Shown: positions 6,709-45,544 of the stretch, in pieces
How positions within the stretch are numbered: the stretch's first letter is position 1
How the letters are laid out: each line of letters starts with the position of its first letter
IMG/VR virus record: IMGVR_UViG_3300019458_000021
Location: 1-64,000 of that record
Strand: one strand, 5' to 3'
DNA length: 64,000 bases
Notes under the pieces: model-generated
Seen by the model: the letters and a program-made list of their open reading frames with translations, nothing else
The model's database searches: none
Told to the model about the DNA's origin: nothing
Made by a program: the position numbers and the translations under genes

Positions 6709-6777
6709 TGGTCTCCCTACCAAGACTCGAACTTGGTCCGCAACGTCCCGAACGTTGTACGCTCACGCTCTAGGGAG
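6709..6777 (-). tRNA. tRNA-Pro(CGG) with truncated D loop
   Basis: CAACG-TTCGGGA-CGTTG; C1-G72, A73; close relative of Pro(TGG) at 12772. Confidence 0.8.
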
Positions 6778-7226: not shown

Positions 7227-8510
7227 TTACTTGTGAAATTGCTCTTCTTCTGTTGAACCTTTCAAAGCCGTTGTCGAAGATTTACCTGATTGAATTACTT
7301 GAGTAACTTCATCGAAGTAACTTGTACCAACTTCACGTTGGTGTTTCACCGCCGTAAATCCTTTCTCAGCTGCTGCAAACTCCTTCTGTTGAAGTTCAAC
7401 AAAAGCAGTCATGTGATTCCTTGCATATCCATACGCTAGTTCAAACATCGAATAGTTCAGCGAATGAAAGCCAGCAAGAGTGATAAACTGAAACTTGTAT
7501 CCCATTGCGCCAAGCTCTCGTTGGAACATCGCGATTGTAGCATCGTCGAGATTTTTCTTCCAGTTGAACGATGGTGAACAGTTGTACGCTAATATCTTAT
7601 CGGGATATTTGCTATGAATCGCTTCCGCAAATCGTTTTGCAAACGTCAAATCTGGTTTGCCTGTTTCACACCAGATCAAGTCTGCATACGGTGCATATGC
7701 AAGCCCACGCGAAATAGCCTGATCGAGACCGTTGCGAACACAAAAAAATCCCTCTGAAGTTCTCTCGCCAGTCAAGAACGGTTTATCGTTTTCATCAATG
7801 TCACTGGTCAGTAAGTTTGCTGCTTCGGCGTCCGTTCGTGCAAATAGCACTGTTGGCACACCCATAATGTCAGCTGCTAATCTCGCAGCGACTAATTTCT
7901 CTACTGCTTCTTTTGTCGAGACAAGAACTTTACCACCCATGTGGCCACATTTTTTCACTGATGCGAGCTGATCTTCAAAATGAACACCAGCCGCACCTGC
8001 TTTAATCATTGCTTTCATTAGCTCATGTGCATTTAGCACACCACCAAATCCTGCTTCTGCATCTGCAACAATTGGAGCAAAATAATCGACTATGCGACAT
8101 CGGGGATCACCGTTGCTTTCCATGTGTTGGATTTGGTCTGCTCGTTGCAACGCATTGTTGATCCGTGTAACAACGGTTGGAACACTTGTGGCAGCATACA
8201 ACGATTGATCCGGATACATACTCAAACTGTCATTCGCATCAGCCGCAACCTGCCAACCCGACAGGTAAATCGCAGGCACGCCTGCTTTAACTTGCTGAAC
8301 TGCTTGATTGCCTGTTAGTGCACCAAGAGCATTGACGAATGGCCGCGTATGGAGAAGGCTCCACAACTTGTTTGCGCCTTGTCGCGCAAGAGTATGTTCA
8401 ACTTGGATAGACCCACTTAAACGATTAACGTCTTCAGCAGTATATGGTCGCGTTATCCCTTTCCATCTTGCATCTGTTTCCCACTCACGGTGCAATCGGT
8501 TGTCCATCAT
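7227..8510 (-). CDS. aceA: Isocitrate lyase
   Basis: Catalytic KKCGH motif, [18 protein letters not shown]-terminal GSTEEEQF; full length 427 aa. Confidence 0.98.
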
Positions 8511-11641: not shown

Positions 11642-11703
11642 TGTACAGGGGTGGAATTGAACCACCGACACGCACGCTGCTCTACCAACTGAGCTACCTG
11701 TAC
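11642..11703 (-). ncRNA. tRNA-like RNA lacking the anticodon arm
   Basis: GTACAGG/CCTGTAC acceptor, canonical D and T arms, only 12 nt between them. Confidence 0.75.
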
Positions 11704-11981: not shown

Positions 11982-12053
11982 TGAACGGTACGGGAATCGA
12001 ACCCGTCTCTTCGGCTTGAAGGGCCGAGGATCTCTCCAGAAATCCAACCGTTC
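11982..12053 (-). tRNA. tRNA-Glu(TTC)
   Basis: TCGGC-CCTTCAA-GCCGA; GAACGGT/ACCGTTC. Confidence 0.88.
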
Positions 12054-12639
12054 AATGTTTTTTGCTGTTTCGTCCAGCATATGTTGCTGTCTGTGAATGA
12101 CAGTTTGGACAAAGAAATTCCAAATTTTGCAGACGATTGTCATTATTCACACCATTTTTGTGTTCAAGCTGCAAAGTTAACGTTTCTCCCTGCCATATAC
12201 CACCATTTTCGCACTTTGCACACTTATAATCAAGTCTACATTCTTCAACGAGACGCTTTTTCAGATCTTTTCGATCATACGTTGAGTTTTTGGTAAGAAT
12301 ATCCTTCAACGCTATTTTTCGCAAGCGTTTGCTCAATCGTTTCCTTTCATAACCAGCACTGTACGGATCAAAATGATCAGTCGAAATGTTATGTTTAAAT
12401 AATCGTGCTTGAAGAATTTTGTATGATGCTCCTGAAACGCTCATACCCATTCGCCGAACAACTTCTGCGCGCGACTTTGATCGTTGAACAGCTTGTTTCA
12501 ACAACTCGGTGTTATCAAACACGCTTGTCTGTTGTCGCTTATGTGGTGCAAAGTGTTCGGTTGAAATTTTGTGTTGTTTGATTGCAGTTAACAATCTTTC
12601 CCGCGTCATTCCACCATTTTTATAGCCAAGATTTGCCAA
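12052..12639 (-). CDS. HNH endonuclease
   Basis: YKCAKC...LQLEHKNGVNNDNRLQNLEFLCPNCHSQT; start uncertain. Confidence 0.9.
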   Translation of the reverse strand: MANLGYKNGGMTRERLLTAIKQHKISTEHFAPHKRQQTSVFDNTELLKQAVQRSKSRAEVVRRMGMSVSGASYKILQARLFKHNISTDHFDPYSAGYERKRLSKRLRKIALKDILTKNSTYDRKDLKKRLVEECRLDYKCAKCENGGIWQGETLTLQLEHKNGVNNDNRLQNLEFLCPNCHSQTATYAGRNSKKH

Positions 12640-12946: not shown

Positions 12947-13092
12947 ATTAAACGTGCAGAGAACATGCGGTTTCCCGCTCGGGTTATGAGCCCGCTTGGC
13001 CCCACGGCCGATTCGCCACAAAAAACACCTCGATGCTCTTTGTGGCGAATTTTAGAGTCGAACTAAATGAAGTAACTCTACTACTGCGCAAC
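12947..13092 (-). ncRNA. Structured RNA motif copy C enclosing a circularly permuted tRNA-Met(CAT)
   Basis: T arm plus ATTCGCC precedes GGCGAAT plus D arm plus CGGG-CTCATAA-CCCG; closed by GTAGTAGAG/TTCTCTGC. Confidence 0.75.
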
Positions 13093-13095
13093 GAT

Positions 13096-13172
13096 TGGTC
13101 TTGGTGACAGGAGTCGAACCTGCGTGGTCTCCGCCCCAAACGGAGTGACTAACCAGACTAGCCTACACCAAG
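13096..13172 (-). tRNA. tRNA-Pro(TGG), second copy
   Basis: CTCCG...loop TT-TGG-GG; CTTGGTG/CACCAAG-A-CCA. Confidence 0.9.
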
Positions 13173-13934
13173 AATGTCTTTTGCATAGCCTACACGACGC
13201 AATTGCGTGAGGTCAGCTTGTGTATATGTTTGGTATTTTCCTTTGATGTGTTCTGGCATCGGAAAATACTCAATTGCATTGCTCGAATCTTGCGTGATGA
13301 TTCGCGCTAATTCGTTAAATGATATTGCCACACCTGTTCCAACATCGTAGATTCCGCCAATAGGATTGGCGAGAAAGGACATGATAACATTCACGACATC
13401 TTCGACATGAATGAAATCTCGTTGTTGTTCACCGCTCTCAAACAGTCTGACTTTACCAGTTGTTTTGTATTGCTCACACAGTTGATGTATCATCGACGCC
13501 ATACGTCCTTTGCAATGCTCACCAGGACCGTACACGTTGAAATATCGTAGTCCAACGACGTGTGGCAGTTTAGTCGCTCGAACAAGGTCGTCGAACATCA
13601 GCTTTGACCATCCGTAAAGATTCAACGGATGTTCCTGTCCTGGTGTGTTACCGTACACAGCGGCCGACGATGCATAGATCAAAGGAATGTTCTGACAGTA
13701 CTCTAACACACGCTTAGAGTAGTCATAGTTTAACTCCATCATGCGCGATACGTCTGTTTCGGTTGTGTCTGCACACGCGCCTTGATGAATGACAGCCTCA
13801 ACATCAGTAAGTTCAAACAACGTGTTTCGGTTGTCGATATCGATCGATACTACTTGACGTCCTCGCGTCTGCAGTGTTTTTACAACATGACTTCCAATAA
13901 AACCATGAGCACCTGTCACAACAATCATTTCCAT
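13158..13934 (-). CDS. hldD: ADP-L-glycero-D-manno-heptose 6-epimerase-like NAD-dependent epimerase (C-terminally shortened)
   Basis: GAHGFIG, HQGACADTTE, YASSAAVYG, PLNLYGWSK, GLRYFNVYGP, YTQADL. Confidence 0.85.
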   Translation of the reverse strand: MEMIVVTGAHGFIGSHVVKTLQTRGRQVVSIDIDNRNTLFELTDVEAVIHQGACADTTETDVSRMMELNYDYSKRVLEYCQNIPLIYASSAAVYGNTPGQEHPLNLYGWSKLMFDDLVRATKLPHVVGLRYFNVYGPGEHCKGRMASMIHQLCEQYKTTGKVRLFESGEQQRDFIHVEDVVNVIMSFLANPIGGIYDVGTGVAISFNELARIITQDSSNAIEYFPMPEHIKGKYQTYTQADLTQLRRVGYAKDILGVG

Positions 13935-13973
13935 CTCTTATAAGTGATACATTACTTATAAGATGAAACAGGG

Positions 13974-14137
13974 TGCGGATGAACAGGATTTGAACCTGCA
14001 TAAGATATACAGACACCTTTCTTTCGGAACTCTTGTCGAAGGGCCTCTCGAGCGGTTATCCCTCAACTCACCGACTTAGTCGCATATCCACCTCTCTCCC
14101 GCTAGTGGGAAGCCGTCTTCATTTGCGCCACATCCGA
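13974..14137 (-). ncRNA. tRNA-like RNA with about 115-nt structured domain replacing the anticodon arm
   Basis: TCGGATG/CATCCGC acceptor, GCAGG-TTCAAAT-CCTGT T arm, internal GATATGC/GTATATC helix. Confidence 0.65.
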
Positions 14138-14142
14138 TAATA

Positions 14143-14219
14143 TGGTCAGGGTGAGAAGACTCGAACTTCCAACCTCCTGTCTCCAAAACAGGCCGTCTAC
14201 CAATTGACATTACACCCTG
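14143..14219 (-). tRNA. tRNA-Pro(TGG), third copy
   Basis: CCTGT-TTTGGAG-ACAGG; CAGGGTG/CACCCTG-A-CCA. Confidence 0.93.
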
Positions 14220-14226
14220 ATATTAG

Positions 14227-14291
14227 CGGCGAAGGAGGGATTCCAACCCCCGTTAGCCCCGCGGGGCTGTTCTCCATTAAACTACCTCGCC
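14227..14291 (-). ncRNA. tRNA-like RNA with anticodon loop collapsed to a tetraloop
   Basis: GGCGAGG/CTTCGCC; AGCCC-CGCG-GGGCT; T loop TTGGAAT. Confidence 0.7.
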
Positions 14292-14302
14292 AATCAAGCT
14301 GA

Positions 14303-14377
14303 GTTAAGATCGCAGACAGCAACAAAGTTCCACCAGGATTCTAGGGCGAAAGTGAAGTAACTGTCTTACTGCGCAAC
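14303..14377 (-). ncRNA. Structured RNA motif copy D
   Basis: GTTG-CGCA-GTAAGACAG-TTACTTC ... CTGTCTGC-GATCT-TAAC. Confidence 0.7.
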
Positions 14378-15152: not shown

Positions 15153-15208
15153 ATATTTCTTTGGCACCGGCGGGGCTGTCCACCACAAACAGCCCCGCCC
15201 CAATCTTC

Positions 15209-15282
15209 TGGTATCCCGAAAAAGAATCGAACCTTCTTTTTCCAACCTTCGCAGGGTTAGTTCTGTATCCATCAGCCGAGAC
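15209..15282 (-). tRNA. tRNA-Arg(GCG), rare anticodon
   Basis: TAACC-CTGCGAA-GGTTG; GU-rich acceptor and T stems; CCA. Confidence 0.7.
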
Positions 15283-15284
15283 AT

Positions 15285-15377
15285 TGGAGGAAGATGTGGG
15301 ATTCGAACCCACGGAGCATCTTGACGACGCTCAACACCTTAGGAGGGTGCCGACATAATCCACTCATCCAATCTTCC
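15285..15377 (-). tRNA. Class II (Ser-like) tRNA with Arg anticodon CCT
   Basis: GGAAGAT/ATCTTCC-T-CCA, GCACC-CTCCTAA-GGTGT, 7-bp variable arm. Confidence 0.8.
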
Positions 15378-19461: not shown

Positions 19462-19541
19462 TGGTGCTCGAGGGGGGATTCGAACCCCCGACCGATTCGG
19501 TTTTAGAGACCGCCGCTCTGAAACCACTGAGCTACTCGAGC
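19462..19541 (-). tRNA. Amber suppressor tRNA (anticodon CTA)
   Basis: GCTCGAG/CTCGAGC-A-CCA; GCGGT-CT-CTA-AA-ACCGA; perfect T arm. Confidence 0.88.
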
Positions 19542-34965: not shown

Positions 34966-36725
34966 CACACGACGAACAATACATTGCGTGCGTTAAGCAC
35001 ATTCTCGAGCACGGCGTTCAAAAACCAAACCGCACAGGGATCGACACGATCGGTGTGTTCGGCTATCAAATGCGTTTCGATCTGCGCGACTATTCGATTC
35101 CATTACTGACGACCAAGAAGGTGCACACAAAGTCGATAATTCATGAACTATTGTGGATGATGTCAGGTCGCGAAGATGTGAAATATCTTGAACAACACCA
35201 AATCACGATATGGGATGAATGGAAGAATAACAAAAGTCAACTAGGTCCAGTTTACGGCGCCATGTGGAGAGCTTATCCGCCCCCTCCAACGTTTTCACCA
35301 ACGCCCATTCGAAACGTTATAGACAATACGAAGATGCGCTCTTGGCAAGATGTTGTACCAACAATGATCTTATCGGAAGGAAAATATTCAAACAAACGAT
35401 TTACAAACATACAGGGAAGGTGCTATGTTGTTCTTGGTGTAGATGGTTTTCAAAATAATGGGGCTAAAGGACGAACGACAACTTATGCTGTTCGGTTTGA
35501 ACAAAGTGGCTGGATAAAACATGGTGTTAGCACAAGATTGGTTCGTTCAGGTCGATTTGTGGATCAGTCGGTGCCGTCTATCTATGGGATTGGAGCACTT
35601 GGTAACTATCGAAACAAAAAAGAAACGGAACAAAACAAACACTTACGACGAACGTGGGAACTGATGCTGTCTCGATGTTATAATCCTAATGATATAGCTT
35701 TTGAAACACACGGCAAGCAAGGCGTAAAAGTGTGCGAACGCTGGAAAGTTTTGAGCGATTTTCTTGAAGACGTCAAACTGCTGCCCAACTGGTTTGTCAA
35801 GCAACAAAAACAGAACTATGTCCTTGACAAAGACTATTACGGTTCTTCAAAACTTTACCATCCTGAAACGTGTGTGTGGCTTCCAAGATCACACAACAAT
35901 CTTTACCGCAAGGATGCTGTGCCTATTGTTTTATCTTCACCATCTAGCACACTGTTCTTTCCATGTGAAAACACCGCGGCAAAGTTTGTGGGGACAACAG
36001 CAGTAGTAATCAAAGCGAGACGTCTTGGAAAAGTAAAAACACTTATAAACGGTTTTGAGGTTGAACCATTTGTCAATAAAAACTTCGTTGTTCGATATCC
36101 AAACACGATTGATCAAGTCGCTACTATCGTTTGGAAACTGAAGAACACACCAAACGACCGCCGTCTCATTGTGTCGGGTTGGCATCCAGGGCTCTTGCCC
36201 TTCGATGGCATTTCTCCTTCTGAAAACGCTTCTCTTGGTCGTCAAGCATTGCCTCCATGTCACTATACGTTTCAACTATATGCAAAACCACTAACTGTTC
36301 AAGAGAGGTTGTATTCAATGACACGTCTTTATCACATTCCGGATGATGGATCAATGGATAACATAGAACAAATCCTCGATGAAAACAAAGTCCCAAAATA
36401 CGAATTGTCGCTGTTACTGAATCAACGGTCATGTGATGTTGGACTTGGTGTTCCATTTAATATCGTTCAATACAGTCTAATGCTTCGAATGTTTTGCGAG
36501 GTTGCAAATATGTCACCAGGCGATTTCATTTGGAGTGGTGCTGATGTACACATCTATGTTAACCACGTTGAATCTTTGCAAGAACAGATCACAAGAGAAC
36601 CGTATCAGTCGCCAAAATTTCGATTCAACAAAAGGGTTGACTCAATTGATTGTTTCAAGTACGATGACTTCGTTGTTGAAGGGTACATATCTCATCCACC
36701 GGTCAAAATGGACGTAGCTGTATGA
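34959..36725 (+). CDS. thyA: Thymidylate synthase with in-frame insertion of about 275 aa
   Basis: RTGIDT, ELLWMMSG, GPVYG, IDQV, ALPPCH, QRSCDVGLGVPFN. Confidence 0.95.
   Translation: MVTHDEQYIACVKHILEHGVQKPNRTGIDTIGVFGYQMRFDLRDYSIPLLTTKKVHTKSIIHELLWMMSGREDVKYLEQHQITIWDEWKNNKSQLGPVYGAMWRAYPPPPTFSPTPIRNVIDNTKMRSWQDVVPTMILSEGKYSNKRFTNIQGRCYVVLGVDGFQNNGAKGRTTTYAVRFEQSGWIKHGVSTRLVRSGRFVDQSVPSIYGIGALGNYRNKKETEQNKHLRRTWELMLSRCYNPNDIAFETHGKQGVKVCERWKVLSDFLEDVKLLPNWFVKQQKQNYVLDKDYYGSSKLYHPETCVWLPRSHNNLYRKDAVPIVLSSPSSTLFFPCENTAAKFVGTTAVVIKARRLGKVKTLINGFEVEPFVNKNFVVRYPNTIDQVATIVWKLKNTPNDRRLIVSGWHPGLLPFDGISPSENASLGRQALPPCHYTFQLYAKPLTVQERLYSMTRLYHIPDDGSMDNIEQILDENKVPKYELSLLLNQRSCDVGLGVPFNIVQYSLMLRMFCEVANMSPGDFIWSGADVHIYVNHVESLQEQITREPYQSPKFRFNKRVDSIDCFKYDDFVVEGYISHPPVKMDVAV
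35280..36104 (+). mobile_element. Homing-endonuclease-like (HNH-type) domain inserted in frame in thyA
   Basis: TWELMLSRCYNP...GVKVCERW...LDKD...YHPETCVW; no intein or intron motifs recognised. Confidence 0.7.
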
Positions 36726-36837: not shown

Positions 36838-38799
36838 ATGACTAAGACTCGCACGTCACTTCAAATCGCCCAAGATTATCTCGTCTTCGGTATTGATTAT
36901 ATTCCCTTCGACGAAGTCATTCAAATGCTTCGAGCAGCGGATGAACTCTATCACGGTGTCGAAGAGAGCTTCCTATCCGATTCCGAATATGACGAAGCCT
37001 ATCGATTCGCGCAGAGAAAAGAACCGACTCACACATACTTCCTCGGAACGGGCAGCAAGGTGCGTGGAAGTAAGATTAAGCTTCCGTATCCGATGGGATC
37101 GCTCACGCAAGTTTACGAGGGCGAAACCGCCAAATGGATTACACAATCGGGAGCTGACAGTACATCAGTCATCATTACGGACAAACTAGATGGGCTAAGT
37201 GCATTGCTTGTCTATGATCATCAGGGCAAGCTTCAAATCGCCTATTCACGAGGAGATGGTATCGAGGGAGCTGATATCACTCGGCACATCTCGTTGATTC
37301 CGTCTGTTCCTCAACAAGTTCGTAACGCGAATTTAGTTGTGCGTGGGGAAGTGATCATGAAGAAGCTAAACTTCCCGACGGCGCAATCAACGATGAAAAC
37401 TCGAAGTGGTCAGCTGTACAAGAACTCACGGAATATGACCGCCGGTCTGATGAACAGCAGTTCCAATCCAGCTGCAATCTACCAACTGCTCGATTTCGTT
37501 GCTTACGAAATCGTGGCAGGAGGTGACCACACTATGAAATCGCTGATGCTTGATGAACTGGTTATCAAACATGGCTTCCTCGTGCCTGGTTGGCAGTCGT
37601 ACAACGCACACGAACTAAACGACACGATTCTAATCGATCGTCTCAACCAACGACGAACCGAATCGGTATATGAACTTGATGGGCTTGTTCTCGATTTCAA
37701 CAATTCTGACTATCGTCAGGGATACGATACTAGTTCGCTCAATCCAAAATACGCTCGCAAGTTCAAAATTGCGGAGGCATCAAATCTTGCCGAGGCGACT
37801 GTTGTTGAAGTCGAGTTGAACCTATCGAAGGACGGTTACTTCAAACCGCGCGTTAAGATTGAGCCCGTTGAATTGGTCGGTGTAACAGTTCAATATGCAA
37901 CAGGATTCAATGCCAAGTTCATCTATGACAATCAAATCGGGCCAGGCGCTGTGATCAAAATCACGCGCAGCGGCGATGTGATTCCATTCATCACTGGTGT
38001 GGTTTCACCTGCGATCGTCAGTGATTTCAACACGTGGTTCGAGATGCAATTCGAGGCATATGGCGACTGGAAATGGACCGAAACTGGTGTTGATGTAATC
38101 CTTGTTGATGCGGCTAGCAATGAGAAAGTACAGTTTGAACGTTTGCTCGACTTCTTCAATACAATCGACATTCCAGCAATGAAGGAAGGCAATTTGCAAG
38201 AGATTTTTCGTGCTGGTTTCACAACACCAGAAGATGTCCTCAATCTCACTGGTGCTGAGCTGCAATCGTTACTCGGCCGGTCAATCGGCGCAAAAATTCA
38301 ACAAGGGCTTCGCGAAAAGTTCACAAACATCCCTCTGTATTTGTTGATGGGTGCTCACCCATCCTTCGGGCGAGGCGTTGGTGTTCGCAAGATGAAGAAG
38401 CTGTACGACAAGTTCGAAGGCAAGCTCGAAATGTTCCGCTTCCCGTCTAACATTGTTCTGATTGAAGGATTTGAAGCGAAGACGGCACAAAAGATTGCTA
38501 ACGGATATCAAACATTCATGCAGTTTCTTGACGACGTGAAACGCGTCGTTACGATTGCGCCTTATCAAGCGCCCGCTCAAGGCCAACTGTCCGGCTTGAC
38601 AGTCGTGTTCACTGGTTTCCGTGACGAAGATCTCGAAAAAGCGATCGAGTCGGCTGGTGGAAAGATCGGGTCGACCGTCAGCAAAAATACATCATTGCTC
38701 GTTGCAGCAGATCCGGATAGCACGTCTGGAAAAGCAGCAAAGGCTCGTGAGCTGGGTGTGAAAGTGATCTCTCCGGATGAAATGAGGACAATGGTATGA
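36838..38799 (+). CDS. ligA: NAD-dependent DNA ligase
   Basis: KLDG adenylation motif, RGDG, DGLV, RSGDVIP, C-terminal BRCT. Confidence 0.95.
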   Translation: MTKTRTSLQIAQDYLVFGIDYIPFDEVIQMLRAADELYHGVEESFLSDSEYDEAYRFAQRKEPTHTYFLGTGSKVRGSKIKLPYPMGSLTQVYEGETAKWITQSGADSTSVIITDKLDGLSALLVYDHQGKLQIAYSRGDGIEGADITRHISLIPSVPQQVRNANLVVRGEVIMKKLNFPTAQSTMKTRSGQLYKNSRNMTAGLMNSSSNPAAIYQLLDFVAYEIVAGGDHTMKSLMLDELVIKHGFLVPGWQSYNAHELNDTILIDRLNQRRTESVYELDGLVLDFNNSDYRQGYDTSSLNPKYARKFKIAEASNLAEATVVEVELNLSKDGYFKPRVKIEPVELVGVTVQYATGFNAKFIYDNQIGPGAVIKITRSGDVIPFITGVVSPAIVSDFNTWFEMQFEAYGDWKWTETGVDVILVDAASNEKVQFERLLDFFNTIDIPAMKEGNLQEIFRAGFTTPEDVLNLTGAELQSLLGRSIGAKIQQGLREKFTNIPLYLLMGAHPSFGRGVGVRKMKKLYDKFEGKLEMFRFPSNIVLIEGFEAKTAQKIANGYQTFMQFLDDVKRVVTIAPYQAPAQGQLSGLTVVFTGFRDEDLEKAIESAGGKIGSTVSKNTSLLVAADPDSTSGKAAKARELGVKVISPDEMRTMV

Positions 38800-40539: not shown

Positions 40540-40890
40540 AACACTGTGTGAAGCAGCTGCAAGGCGGACAAGACCCGAGTTCGAATCTCGGCATCTCCAC
40601 CAACACGGTTCGAATGATAAGTTGAGTCTAGGGCAGAGGTACAACAGTTGTGAGACACTGCCATTGTGAGAAATGCTAGCAAAGCTCACACACGAACCAC
40701 CTATGGGGGTGAATGGAATTGATTGACGTGCGAGTGGCCAGTGGACAGTGCGAGAGACGACTGACGTAATCAGCGTAAAACGTTAAACGCAAACGACTCT
40801 GCGTACAATGTTGAGGAACTCTACGGAGTAGCTGCTTAACAGCAGCCTTGCCTCGACCGAGCGTGACTGCTTGGGAACAGGAAACGTCAG
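40540..40890 (+). ncRNA. ssrA: Circularly permuted (two-piece) tmRNA
   Basis: Acceptor piece ending CCGAG-TTCGAAT-CTCGG-CATCTCC-ACCA (40602) precedes GGGGGTG (40705) with G3:U70; tag ANDSAYNVEELYGVAA* at 40789-40839. Confidence 0.92.
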
Positions 40891-43642: not shown

Positions 43643-45544
43643 ATGGCTAAAGAGAAAACATACACCGCCAAGGACATTCAAGACCTGGGCGATCGGGACT
43701 ATGTTCGTCTTCGAACACAGATCTATTTCGGCAACATGCATCCGACGGCGTATCGCGTTCCAATTCTGTCGGCCACAAAGCTCGTTGTTAAAGAGATTGA
43801 ATTCATTCCAGCCGTCTACAAAGCGGTAAACGAGGTCATTGACAACAGTCTTGATGAGTTTGCGCAGATCAAATCGAAAATCAAGCTGCTAAAAATCAAC
43901 ACAAATCTCAAAGAAGGATACTACTGCGTTGAAGATAACGGTCGTGGTATTCCAATTGAGAAGAAGAAAGATCGTGAAGGTGAACTCGTATGGGTTCCTG
44001 AGTTGGTATTAGGACGTCTTCGTTCCGGTCGAAACTTCAAGACCGAAAAAGACATTGGTGTCATCGGTCAAAACGGTGTTGGAGCCGCATGTACCAACTT
44101 TTGCAGTAGTGTATTTGAAGTCGATGTGTATCGAGATAACAAACACTACTCACAACGTTTTGAAGATGGTGCTGCAACTGTTGAACCAGCAAAGATGAAG
44201 AGTGTTGTTGCACAAAGCACAGGAACAACCGTTGCATTCACACTCGATCCGAAAGTGTTCAAGGATATTCAGCTACCAGAGCGATTGATTACCAACCGTA
44301 TTCACGAAATTGCTCTTACCAATCCCGATGTGACGATCGAATACAAAGGCGAGCGCATTCGTTACAAACGAGGGTTCGCGGAATACGTTGAGAAGCTAAA
44401 CGGATCGCATTCTGTATTCACAATTGACACACCCAACGTTCAAGGTGAAGTCTACCTGCTTTTCGATGTCAATAAAGATGAATCCGAAGAGATGTTCACA
44501 TGGGTTAACAGTTCTTTGCTATTCGACGGCGGCAAGTGCAATACACAGTTCCTTAACGCGTTTTTTGAGAAAGCGATTGTAGCACTTGGGTCTGAGGCAA
44601 AGAAACGCAAGTGTGAAGTCACTCGCAATGATGTCCGAGAAGGGTTGTTGATTTTATGCAACCTAAAAATGAAGAACCCTGAATACGACAGCCAGGCCAA
44701 AACTCGACTGACCGCTCCTGATCTTCGGAAAGACTTCGTTGAAGCTATCGAAAAACAGTGGAAAGCGTTTGCCAAGAAGAATGACACTTGGTTGAATGCA
44801 CTGCTGGCGCGCGCCGAACGTCGGCATAAATTTCAAGAAGACTCAAAAGCGATTGAAGAACACGAACTGAACAAAAAACGCAAACGTGTAGCTGGTCTCC
44901 TCGATGCAACAGGTCGCATTCGTTCAAACTGTCAGATTCTCATCACGGAAGGTGAGAGCGCACAGGGACAGATTAGCGAAGCGCGTGATCCAACAACGAC
45001 AGCTGCGTTTGCACTGACAGGCAAGATCAACAATGTATATGGCAACACGGCCGCCCAAGTATTGAAGATGGGCAAATTGACTGATCTGTTAGCTGCAATT
45101 GGTCTTACTCCGGGGAAGAAAGCAATTCGAAGTCACCTCAACTATGGTAAGATCGTCATTGCAACAGATGCCGACTACGATGGTGATGATATCTTCACAC
45201 TGCTTGTAAACTTGTTCTATCAGTTCTGGCCAGAACTGTTCGACAAGCACTATACGCCGTTTGTTTACAGACTCGTGGCTCCCAACGTAGTCGTGTCAAA
45301 AAGCGGAAAACGGATTCATTTCACCCGGCGCTCTGAGTTTGAGAAGGTTAAGGATAAGTATAAGGGATGGACAGTTGAGTATATGAAGGGATTAGGTTCG
45401 ATGTGGAAGGAAGACTGGGAGATGGTTCTCACAGGCGAAACCGATACATTGGTGCCCATCATCGATGATGGGAATATCAGCAGCACTCTCACTTTGTTGT
45501 TTGGCGAAAATGCCGATGCGCGAAAAGAATGGTTGTCAAAGTAA
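43643..45544 (+). CDS. Type II topoisomerase large subunit (gp39/60-like)
   Basis: EVIDNSLDE, DNGRGIP, GQNGVG, TEGESA, TDADYDG, YMKGLG. Confidence 0.95.
   Translation: MAKEKTYTAKDIQDLGDRDYVRLRTQIYFGNMHPTAYRVPILSATKLVVKEIEFIPAVYKAVNEVIDNSLDEFAQIKSKIKLLKINTNLKEGYYCVEDNGRGIPIEKKKDREGELVWVPELVLGRLRSGRNFKTEKDIGVIGQNGVGAACTNFCSSVFEVDVYRDNKHYSQRFEDGAATVEPAKMKSVVAQSTGTTVAFTLDPKVFKDIQLPERLITNRIHEIALTNPDVTIEYKGERIRYKRGFAEYVEKLNGSHSVFTIDTPNVQGEVYLLFDVNKDESEEMFTWVNSSLLFDGGKCNTQFLNAFFEKAIVALGSEAKKRKCEVTRNDVREGLLILCNLKMKNPEYDSQAKTRLTAPDLRKDFVEAIEKQWKAFAKKNDTWLNALLARAERRHKFQEDSKAIEEHELNKKRKRVAGLLDATGRIRSNCQILITEGESAQGQISEARDPTTTAAFALTGKINNVYGNTAAQVLKMGKLTDLLAAIGLTPGKKAIRSHLNYGKIVIATDADYDGDDIFTLLVNLFYQFWPELFDKHYTPFVYRLVAPNVVVSKSGKRIHFTRRSEFEKVKDKYKGWTVEYMKGLGSMWKEDWEMVLTGETDTLVPIIDDGNISSTLTLLFGENADARKEWLSK

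What the first reader, a model, noticed from the sequence alone, without database searches (positions are those of the whole stretch)
13974..14137. tRNA-like RNA with a 115-nt structured domain in place of the anticodon arm
Acceptor (TCGGATG/CATCCGC) and a canonical T arm flank a large insert with hairpins (CTTCCC/GGGAG) and a long helix (GATATGC-GAC/GTC-T-GTATATC). It is too short for a group I intron and has no tag ORF. It is reminiscent of T4 stable RNAs with tRNA-like ends.
Basis: partly seen in the sequence, partly recalled or inferred. Interest (0 to 1): 0.6.

Follow-up and report, generated by a model that had tools for sequence, protein, structure and literature searches.

The report
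Oversized tRNA-like gene in phage array
A 164-base gene in a giant phage's tRNA cluster is a transfer-RNA relative with about 90 extra bases between its anticodon arm and T arm; it resembles phage T4's unexplained "species 1" RNA, but nothing yet shows that it does anything.

Summary
The window is the start of a roughly 350-kb jumbo phage from a cave metagenome, with a long minus-strand tRNA array. The acceptor pairing, canonical T arm, CTTCC/GGGAG hairpin and long helix are all present at 13974-14137 (minus strand).

The CTTCC/GGGAG hairpin is itself an anticodon-arm look-alike: a 5-bp stem and a 7-nt loop CACUAGC, at the canonical distance from the acceptor. The extra 96 nt lie in the variable-region position, not in place of the anticodon arm.

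Given the T arm, acceptor plus hairpin arise by chance with p about 0.001. Neither the whole element (z +0.62) nor the insert (z -0.5) folds better than shuffles. Rfam finds nothing. No homologue was found.

The nearest related phage has the two flanking tRNA-Pro genes 11 nt apart, so the element and the adjacent hldD-like gene are a lineage-specific insertion. A strain variant carries one change, U28 to C, which turns a G.U pair into G-C in the hairpin.

Xanthomonas phage XacN1 has an unannotated 149-nt element with the same geometry but no sequence similarity. T4 rnaC is the closest described RNA.

Best reading: a tRNA-derived, non-decoding tRNA-like gene. A decaying pseudogene is nearly as likely.

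The parts
13974..14137 (-). The whole tRNA-like element, 164 nt (U1 = 14137, A164 = 13974)
   Evidence: Sequence read. Identical in three assemblies. The custom model R1 matches only this place at high score.
14130..14136 (-). 5' acceptor strand C2-U8. C2-G7 pair with C157-G162; U8 faces U156.
   Evidence: Placement within 10 nt of the preceding tRNA has p = 0.02.
14113..14129 (-). Degenerate D region. Only C11-G24 and G12-C23 pair; the loop is AAUGAA, with A where G19 would be.
   Evidence: ARAGORN drawing at relaxed threshold. Rfam finds no truncated tRNA match in the 5' half.
14096..14112 (-). Anticodon-arm-like hairpin: stem CUUCC/GGGAG, 7-nt loop CACUAGC (CUA in the anticodon position, A instead of U33)
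   Evidence: The isolated hairpin has z -2.9. The only polymorphism, 14110 A>G (U28 to C), makes U28.G40 into C-G.
14000..14095 (-). 96-nt surplus segment in the variable-region position (positions 43-138)
   Evidence: Real tRNAs align end to end to model R1 with this segment skipped. No similarity to anything searched. Fold z -0.5.
14079..14088 (-). 5' arm of the possible closing helix of the insert (positions 50-59)
   Evidence: Sequence complementarity only. It competes with the MFE pairing of positions 8-14 with 54-61.
14004..14014 (-). 3' arm of the possible closing helix (positions 124-134, U127 bulged)
   Evidence: Same as for the 5' arm.
13983..13999 (-). Canonical T arm: GCAGG, UUCAAAU, CCUGU
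   Evidence: A weak Rfam clan match covers it. BLAST matches to T arms of phage tRNA-Pro genes.
13976..13982 (-). 3' acceptor strand U156-G162
13971..13975 (-). 3' tail CACCC. No CCA is encoded. Read as an unpaired C, then discriminator A, then CC, it parallels the C-ACCA tail of the XacN1 element.
   Evidence: Most tRNAs of the array encode CCA.
14143..14219 (-). Upstream neighbour, tRNA-Pro(UGG). Its CCA ends 5 nt before the element.
13929..13968 (-). Leader hairpin between the element and the hldD-like ORF. Its 3' arm covers the ribosome-binding region and the first ATG.
   Evidence: Fold -11.6 kcal/mol, z -2.84. The CTTATAAG palindrome halves are over-represented.
13158..13934 (-). hldD-like ADP-heptose 6-epimerase ORF (258 aa), inserted together with the element. 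Its stop codon lies inside the next tRNA-Pro.
   Evidence: Pfam Epimerase 2.8e-37. Best bacterial relatives 47-49% identical. Absent from the related phage.
13096..13172 (-). Downstream tRNA-Pro(UGG). In relatives it directly follows the first tRNA-Pro.

Best explanation
The element is a tRNA-derived gene. Its order is: acceptor 5' strand, degenerate D region, an intact anticodon-arm-like hairpin (loop CACUAGC), about 90-96 extra nucleotides in the variable-loop position, a canonical T arm, then the acceptor 3' strand.

It arose, together with the adjacent hldD-like gene, as an insertion between two tRNA-Pro genes that are adjacent in relatives.

Inferred, not shown:
- It is co-transcribed with the minus-strand tRNA array.
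- Because the acceptor/T-arm minihelix is intact, the host tRNA-end machinery cuts it out: RNase P at the 5' end, and 3' trimming with addition of the missing terminal A.
- The product is a stable tRNA-like RNA of about 160 nt, of the kind exemplified by T4 species 1 RNA.
- The same cuts would free the hldD message from the tRNA precursor.
- It probably does not decode. Reasons: A instead of U33, a two-pair D stem, loss of G19, mismatches at both ends of the acceptor, and a 96-nt variable region.
- It fits with the other non-decoding tRNA look-alikes of this array.
For: Position and strand:
- It lies in the array on the array's strand, 5 nt after a tRNA's CCA.

tRNA features:
- Canonical T arm and six Watson-Crick acceptor pairs.
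- Anticodon-arm-like hairpin at the canonical offset. Joint chance probability is 0.0012.
- Real tRNAs and a tRNA-like gene of the related phage align end to end to a model of the element with the 92-nt insert skipped. These are L036 14361-14432 at 19.7 bits and a tRNA-Cys at 17 bits.
- The only strain difference (U28 to C) keeps or improves the hairpin.

Origin as an insertion:
- The relative (L036) and XacN1 both have the two tRNA-Pro genes 11 nt apart.

Context of non-decoding look-alikes:
- The neighbouring tRNA-like gene 14227-14291 has an orthologue with three compensatory pairs but a non-conserved anticodon loop.
- A 62-nt tRNA-like gene lacks an anticodon arm.

Parallels elsewhere:
- XacN1 45296-45444 has the same segment lengths. 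It has a perfect 8-bp acceptor, 17 nt, a 5-bp stem with 7-nt loop (also with A at position 33), an insert of about 80 nt, a T arm, and an encoded C-ACCA tail.
- T4 rnaC is an annotated stable RNA with a T arm and closing stem.
Against: - No homologue of the insert and no covariation. The clade is sampled by only two phages.
- The element is absent from the nearest relative.
- There is no thermodynamic signal, unlike T4 rnaC at z -4.6. The well-formed XacN1 element also lacks one, z -0.7.
- Divergence between strains is the same as in the neighbouring ORF, about 0.6%, so it has no power to show constraint.
- No CCA is encoded, although most tRNAs of the array encode it.
- The D arm is degenerate and the 5' half is not recognised by Rfam.
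- No RNA data exist.
Confidence: 0.45

Rival explanations
1. It is a decaying pseudogene. A duplicated tRNA or tRNA-like gene was hit by a roughly 90-nt insertion during the rearrangement that brought in the hldD-like gene. It is now functionless and is carried along only because it is young.
For: - Absent from the nearest relative, and gained together with foreign DNA.
- Degenerate D arm, A at position 33, mismatches at both ends of the acceptor, and no CCA.
- No Rfam match.
- The insert folds no better than shuffles.
- No copy anywhere else.
- The array holds other orphan T arms and fragments.
Against: - Acceptor, anticodon-like stem and T arm are all still paired, and the single polymorphism is pair-preserving.
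- An independent element with the same geometry, a perfect acceptor and an encoded CCA exists in XacN1.
- Neighbouring non-decoding tRNA look-alikes are conserved with compensatory changes.
Confidence: 0.35
2. It is an irregular amber-anticodon tRNA with a giant variable arm that is still charged and used. It could be the array's second suppressor, or a mimic offered to host enzymes that cut or bind tRNA. It would belong to a class shared with the XacN1 element.
For: - CUA sits in the middle of a 7-nt loop on a 5-bp stem.
- Arrays of this type carry two CUA genes: XacN1 (PMC5852040) and L036. This window has only one canonical CUA gene.
- The irregular second CUA gene of L036 also has A before CUA.
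- Long variable arms are what SerRS recognises, and irregular long-arm tRNAs can suppress amber codons (PMC5389517).
- The XacN1 element has the same geometry.
Against: - There is no sign that the phage reads TAG as sense.
- The missing U33, weak D arm and loss of G19 argue against ribosomal use.
- A 96-nt variable region is about four times longer than any in the class II tRNAs seen here.
- The class rests on two elements without sequence similarity.
Confidence: 0.1
3. It is an intron-containing tRNA gene whose insert is removed to give a normal-sized tRNA(CUA).
For: ARAGORN, with introns allowed and the threshold lowered to 90%, draws a tRNA(cta) with a 75-nt intron in the anticodon loop.
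Against: - That drawing needs a C.A mismatch in the stem and ignores the better local hairpin.
- The default threshold finds nothing.
- The insert is too short for a group I intron and Rfam finds no intron or ribozyme.
- No RtcB, RNA ligase or CCA-adding enzyme is encoded in the 237 kb held.
- The insert lies in the variable region, where no bacterial or phage intron type is known (my own knowledge).
Confidence: 0.06
4. It is a chance resemblance: a stray T-arm-like motif in an untranslated leader of the hldD-like gene.
For: - A 5' strand with at least 6 of 7 pairs somewhere upstream is common, p = 0.19.
- T-arm-like motifs occur outside tRNAs.
Against: - The joint probability of placement plus hairpin is 0.0012.
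- The T loop is fully canonical.
- The element fills the spacer exactly from the previous tRNA.
Confidence: 0.04

Closest known systems
Phage T4 species 1 RNA (rnaC), a small stable RNA of the T4 tRNA cluster
   Same: - Encoded in a phage tRNA cluster on the tRNA strand, directly beside tRNA genes.
- Size of 139 nt against 164 nt.
- Canonical T arm (CCGGG, UUCGAAU, CCCGG) followed by a 3' strand that pairs with the 5' end, enclosing a large internal domain.
- Its function is still not established (my own knowledge).
   Different: - No sequence similarity. Model R1 finds nothing in the T4 locus.
- T4 rnaC folds far better than shuffles, z -4.6 against +0.6.
- It has no anticodon-arm-like 5-bp/7-nt hairpin at the canonical offset.
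- T4 rnaC is annotated as a stable RNA in the T4 record. This element has no expression data.
Unannotated element of Xanthomonas phage XacN1, AP018399 45296-45444
   Same: - Same order and nearly the same segment lengths: acceptor, 17 nt of weak D region with a 6-nt loop, a 5-bp stem with a 7-nt loop carrying A at position 33, an insert of about 80-96 nt closed by an imperfect long helix, a T arm, and a C-A-C-C tail.
- It starts 5 nt after a tRNA.
   Different: - No alignable sequence.
- The loop holds GUA, not CUA.
- The acceptor is a perfect 8 bp and CCA is encoded.
- The phages are not close relatives: this window's topoisomerase II is at most 35% identical to that of any cultured phage.
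Irregular long-variable-arm tRNAs (class II tRNAs, tRNA-Sec, allo-tRNAs; PMC5389517)
   Same: - Extra helix between the anticodon arm and the T arm.
- Non-standard acceptor and D arms.
- Some occur in phage tRNA clusters, some carry nonsense anticodons, and some are thought to be non-translating.
   Different: - In the class II tRNAs of this window and of XacN1 the variable arm is about 12 to 21 nt. Here the segment is 96 nt.
- Rfam tRNA-Sec scores 16 bits against a cut-off of 47.
- The 8/4 or 9/3 branch and the long D stem with a tetraloop are not present.
Canonical tRNA (Rfam RF00005)
   Same: T arm, acceptor pairing, and an anticodon-arm-sized hairpin at the right place.
   Different: - No match to the model.
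- D arm degenerate.
- U33 and G19 absent.
- 96-nt variable region.
- No CCA.

Membership tests
Canonical tRNA (RF00005) | Score at or above the family's gathering threshold (29 bits) | tested here: not met
   No RF00005 match over the element at gathering or at E up to 10. The best clan hit is tRNA-Sec at 16.4 bits. The 5' half alone gives no tRNA hit.
Canonical tRNA (RF00005) | 7-bp acceptor stem closed by a T arm with a UUCRANY loop | tested here: met
   Six Watson-Crick pairs plus U.U. T arm GCAGG/UUCAAAU/CCUGU.
Canonical tRNA (RF00005) | D arm with a 3-4 bp stem and G18-G19 | tested here: not met
   Only two pairs. The loop is AAUGAA, with A at the G19 place.
Canonical tRNA (RF00005) | 5-bp anticodon stem and 7-nt loop with U33 | tested here: inconclusive
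   The stem and loop size are met (positions 26-42). Position 33 is A.
Canonical tRNA (RF00005) | Variable region of 4-5 nt, or an arm of up to about 25 nt | tested here: not met
   96 nt lie between the anticodon-like stem and the T stem.
T4 species 1 RNA type (stable tRNA-like RNA of a phage tRNA cluster) | Gene inside a phage tRNA cluster on the same strand, with a T arm and a closing acceptor-like stem around a large internal domain | tested here: met
T4 species 1 RNA type (stable tRNA-like RNA of a phage tRNA cluster) | Sequence or profile similarity to T4 rnaC | tested here: not met
   Model R1 gives no hit in the T4 locus. BLAST of the element finds no T4-like record.
T4 species 1 RNA type (stable tRNA-like RNA of a phage tRNA cluster) | Accumulates as a discrete processed RNA during infection | not testable with these tools
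   Only two DNA runs hold the sequence and there is no RNA run.
Group I intron in a tRNA gene | Intron of roughly 200 nt or more in the anticodon loop, with the conserved core; match to the Rfam intron model | tested here: not met
   No Rfam intron or ribozyme hit at E up to 10. The surplus is 96 nt and lies after the anticodon-like arm.
tmRNA (one-piece or permuted) | tRNA-like domain plus tag reading frame and pseudoknots | tested here: not met
   No Rfam tmRNA hit here. ARAGORN tmRNA mode at 80% threshold returns 'Tag not identified'. The phage's permuted tmRNA is at 40542-40839.
tRNA-Sec / allo-tRNA | 8/5, 8/4 or 9/3 acceptor branch, long D stem with a tetraloop, variable arm up to about 25 nt | tested here: not met
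   tRNA-Sec scores 16.4 bits against a cut-off of 47. The D region has two pairs. Family features are taken from PMC5389517.

The most novel reading that the evidence does not exclude
Jumbo-phage tRNA arrays hold an unrecognised class of tRNA look-alikes of 145-165 nt with a giant variable region. Its members so far would be this element and XacN1 45296-45444, with T4 species 1 RNA as a looser analogue. They would keep the acceptor/T-arm branch and an anticodon-like arm with A33, and would act as non-decoding tRNA mimics. Possible roles are decoys or sensors in the conflict over host tRNA-cutting defences, or irregular amber-anticodon tRNAs.
Probability: 0.15. Interest if true: 0.7.

Novelty: new variant of a known kind. 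Interest (0 to 1): 0.4.

Why it matters
Phage tRNA arrays are now read mainly as codon supply and as counter-measures against host nucleases that cut tRNAs.

This array carries several RNAs that keep the tRNA body but not a usable anticodon:
- a tetraloop-capped tRNA-like gene
- a tRNA-like gene with no anticodon arm
- this oversized element

If they are made and stable, they point to uses of the tRNA shape other than decoding. They would also give a handle on the function of T4 species 1 RNA, which is still unexplained.

If the element is only a relic, it documents how foreign genes (here a heptose epimerase) are captured inside tRNA arrays. It also shows why tRNA finders miss or mislabel such loci.

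Tried and rejected
RNA family and gene-finder scans
- Rfam at gathering and at E up to 10, on the window, the locus and each half: nothing beyond a weak T-arm-driven tRNA-Sec match.
- ARAGORN default finds nothing. The intron model appears only at a 90% threshold and was rejected, because of the stem mismatch and the better local hairpin. The tmRNA mode gave nonsense.

Searches for homologues
- Exact scan of viral contigs for the T arm plus acceptor: 0 hits.
- Protein-anchored searches for syntenic relatives found only the same phage and one relative that lacks the element. These used the hldD-like protein, the 491-aa neighbour and the 487-aa neighbour in viral contigs, and an alignment of the 491-aa neighbour in metagenome contigs.
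- BLAST of the element against 50,697 phage records: only T-arm-length matches.
- BLAST against all fetched loci and the phage's own 237 kb: no second copy.
- Custom covariance model R1 over the loci and over whole records of XacN1, RsoM2USA and the relative: only ordinary tRNAs with the insert skipped.

Other ideas tested
- The element came in with bacterial DNA upstream of hldD: two bacterial contexts show no tRNA-like sequence there.
- The phage reads TAG as sense: no support.
- The phage encodes splicing or repair enzymes: none in the part of the genome held.
- Expression: no RNA run holds the sequence. The laid reads were DNA contigs only.
- Sequence alignment of the element with the XacN1 element showed no homology.

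Step left out
Only referenced, unaltered stretches were searched.

Full report
**What the window is**

The window is the first 64 kb of a 237-kb viral record. The same phage occurs as a 351,809-bp contig and in a second assembly. The sequencing runs that hold it are cave metagenomes.

It has no close cultured relative. Its topoisomerase II large subunit is at most about 35% identical to any phage record.

The minus strand of the first 23 kb or so carries a long tRNA array interspersed with ORFs. ARAGORN finds 27 genes in the window, and Rfam finds further matches. A permuted tmRNA lies at 40542-40839.

**The observation**

I number the minus strand from U1 = 14137 to A164 = 13974. The element starts 5 nt after the CCA of tRNA-Pro(UGG) at 14143-14219. 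It ends 39 nt before the ATG of an ORF at 13158-13934.

- C2-G7 pair with C157-G162.
- The T arm is GCAGG/UUCAAAU/CCUGU (positions 139-155).
- CUUCC/GGGAG forms a hairpin (positions 26-42).
- Positions 50-59 can pair with 124-134.

Neither the whole element nor the insert folds better than shuffled sequence: z is +0.62 for the whole and -0.5 for the insert. The minimum-energy fold uses a different, incompatible pairing, 8-14 with 54-61.

**Re-reading the anatomy**

The 26-42 hairpin has a 5-bp stem and a 7-nt loop, CACUAGC. It begins 24 nt after the first paired acceptor base. That equals 7 + 2 + 4 + 6 + 4 + 1, which is the geometry of a tRNA with a short D loop.

So an anticodon-arm look-alike is present. 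The surplus 96 nt (positions 43-138) lie between it and the T arm, where a variable loop or arm belongs.

Other features:
- The D region has only two pairs and lacks G19.
- Position 33 is A.
- The tail is CACCC, not CCA.

In 30,000 shuffles of the upstream 138 nt:
- An acceptor partner within 10 nt of the previous tRNA occurred in 2%.
- That together with a correctly placed 5-bp/7-nt hairpin occurred in 0.12%.

I built a covariance model from the element. It aligns real tRNAs of the related phage end to end with the 92-nt insert skipped, at 19.7 and 17 bits. No homologue of the insert turned up.

I conclude that the unit is tRNA-derived. The evidence for a folded insert is nil.

**Origin**

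The ORF downstream is a compact HldD-like ADP-heptose 6-epimerase:
- Pfam Epimerase, 2.8e-37.
- 47-49% identical to gammaproteobacterial enzymes.
- Aligned to residues 1-293 of a 317-aa homologue, with internal gaps.
- Its stop codon lies inside the next tRNA-Pro.

The only related phage found is 53-66% identical in a neighbouring 491-aa protein. It keeps the same gene order, but its two tRNA-Pro genes are 11 nt apart. XacN1 shows the same 11-nt spacing.

The element plus the epimerase gene is therefore an insertion specific to this lineage. Two bacterial hldD contexts show nothing tRNA-like upstream.

**Variation**

A second strain differs at 0.6% in the epimerase ORF, with three synonymous and two replacement changes. 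It differs at one position in the element, 14110 A>G, which is U28 to C.

In the 5-bp register this converts U28.G40 to C-G, and the hairpin is at least as stable. This is compatible with a maintained stem, but it has no statistical weight.

**Context that bears on function**

The array contains other RNAs that keep the tRNA body but not a usable anticodon:
- 14227-14291 has an anticodon stem capped by a 2-4-nt loop. Its orthologue in the relative has a 7-nt loop, AAAUGGA. The two differ by three double compensatory changes in the acceptor, anticodon stem and T stem.
- 11642-11703 is a 62-nt unit with a perfect acceptor, D and T arms, and no anticodon arm.

The window has one canonical CUA tRNA. 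The relative and XacN1 each have two. The relative's second one is irregular and also has A before CUA.

There is no sign of TAG being read as sense in the 237 kb.

**Parallels**

I scanned several arrays for orphan T arms with a distant acceptor partner. One other element showed both a long-range acceptor and a correctly placed 5-bp/7-nt hairpin: XacN1 45296-45444, which is unannotated.
- It has a perfect 8-bp acceptor.
- It has the same 17-nt weak D region.
- Its loop is AAGUAAU, again with A at position 33.
- It has an insert of about 80 nt closed by an imperfect helix, then a T arm, then the tail C-ACCA.
- It shares no alignable sequence with the target.
- It has no homologue in the phage collection other than XacN1's own second copy.
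- It also folds no better than shuffles, z -0.7.

T4 rnaC, the annotated species 1 stable RNA, has a T arm and a closing stem around a large domain. It is strongly structured, z -4.6.

**Verdict**

- tRNA-derived, with a large insertion in the variable-region position: about 0.8.
- Expressed, end-processed, non-decoding tRNA-like RNA that also marks the 5' boundary of the hldD message: 0.45.
- Inert relic: 0.35.
- Functional irregular CUA tRNA or mimic class: 0.1.
- Intron: 0.06.
- Chance: 0.04.

Nothing here could test expression.

I did not submit any joined ('spliced') sequence to a search. Only unaltered referenced stretches were used.

Noticed in passing
window 40542-40839 (+): Permuted (two-piece type) tmRNA gene in the phage. 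Rfam RF04321, 97.2 bits, E 1.3e-17.
   Followed up: no
window 14227-14291 (-); L036 14362-14432: tRNA-like gene whose anticodon stem is capped by a 2-4-nt loop. The orthologue in the related phage has a 7-nt loop AAAUGGA. The two differ by three compensatory pairs, so the tRNA body is conserved but the anticodon loop is not.
   Followed up: partly
window 11642-11703 (-) and about 6712-6776 (-): Undersized tRNA look-alikes. One is a 62-nt unit with a perfect 7-bp acceptor, normal D and T arms, and 11 nt in place of the anticodon arm (Rfam tRNA 50 bits). The other is a roughly 65-nt unit with a perfect acceptor, T arm and CCA that both finders missed.
   Followed up: partly
window 19462-19541 (-): Canonical amber-suppressor tRNA(CUA), 64 bits. 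The phage shows no sign of reading TAG as sense in 237 kb. The same puzzle was reported for XacN1 (PMC5852040).
   Followed up: partly
window 15285-15377 (-): 93-nt class II tRNA with a Ser-type acceptor (GGAAGAU) and a long variable arm, but anticodon CCU, which ARAGORN calls Arg. It is similar to annotated tRNA-Ser genes of Serratia and Erwinia jumbo phages.
   Followed up: no
window 13158-13934 (-) and 13929-13968 (-): Compact HldD-like heptose epimerase gene captured inside the tRNA array, with its stop codon inside tRNA-Pro. A 15-pair leader hairpin (z -2.8) covers its ribosome-binding region and first ATG.
   Followed up: partly
window 14299-14348 and 15174-15230: Patches where the two strains differ at about 30 of 50 positions or by a 14-nt deletion, against about 0.6% elsewhere. 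These are spacers between tRNA-like genes.
   Followed up: no
window 13000-13067 (-): Orphan T arm (13051-13067) whose 3' flank starts a 12-bp perfect inverted repeat, ATTCGCCACAAA with TTTGTGGCGAAT. A similar motif, GTTGCGCAGTA...GTTACTTCA, follows two tRNAs here and one in the relative.
   Followed up: no
window 34959-36725 (+): Thymidylate synthase ORF of 588 aa with an HNH endonuclease domain in frame in its middle (residues about 172-318). This could be an intein-like or endonuclease insertion.
   Followed up: no
window 7227-8510 (-) and 12052-12639 (-): An isocitrate-lyase-family ORF and an HNH homing-endonuclease ORF sit between tRNA genes of the array.
   Followed up: no
L049 (XacN1 AP018399) 30282-30390, 36856-36980, 45296-45444: Three unannotated enlarged tRNA look-alikes (about 106, 122 and 149 nt) with perfect acceptors, T arms and encoded CCA. 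XacN1 tRNAs for Lys(CUU), Gly(UCC), Thr(UGU), Cys(GCA) and Asn(GUU) also carry long variable arms, which is unusual for these identities.
   Followed up: partly
L036 13552-13637 and 13149-13221, 13640-13714: The relative's tRNA-Thr(UGU) has a 14-nt anticodon loop made of a tandem CTGTCAC/GTGTCAC. Two paralogous tRNA-like genes there carry either a loop AACUACG (CUA with A33) or a 6-bp stem with a tetraloop.
   Followed up: no
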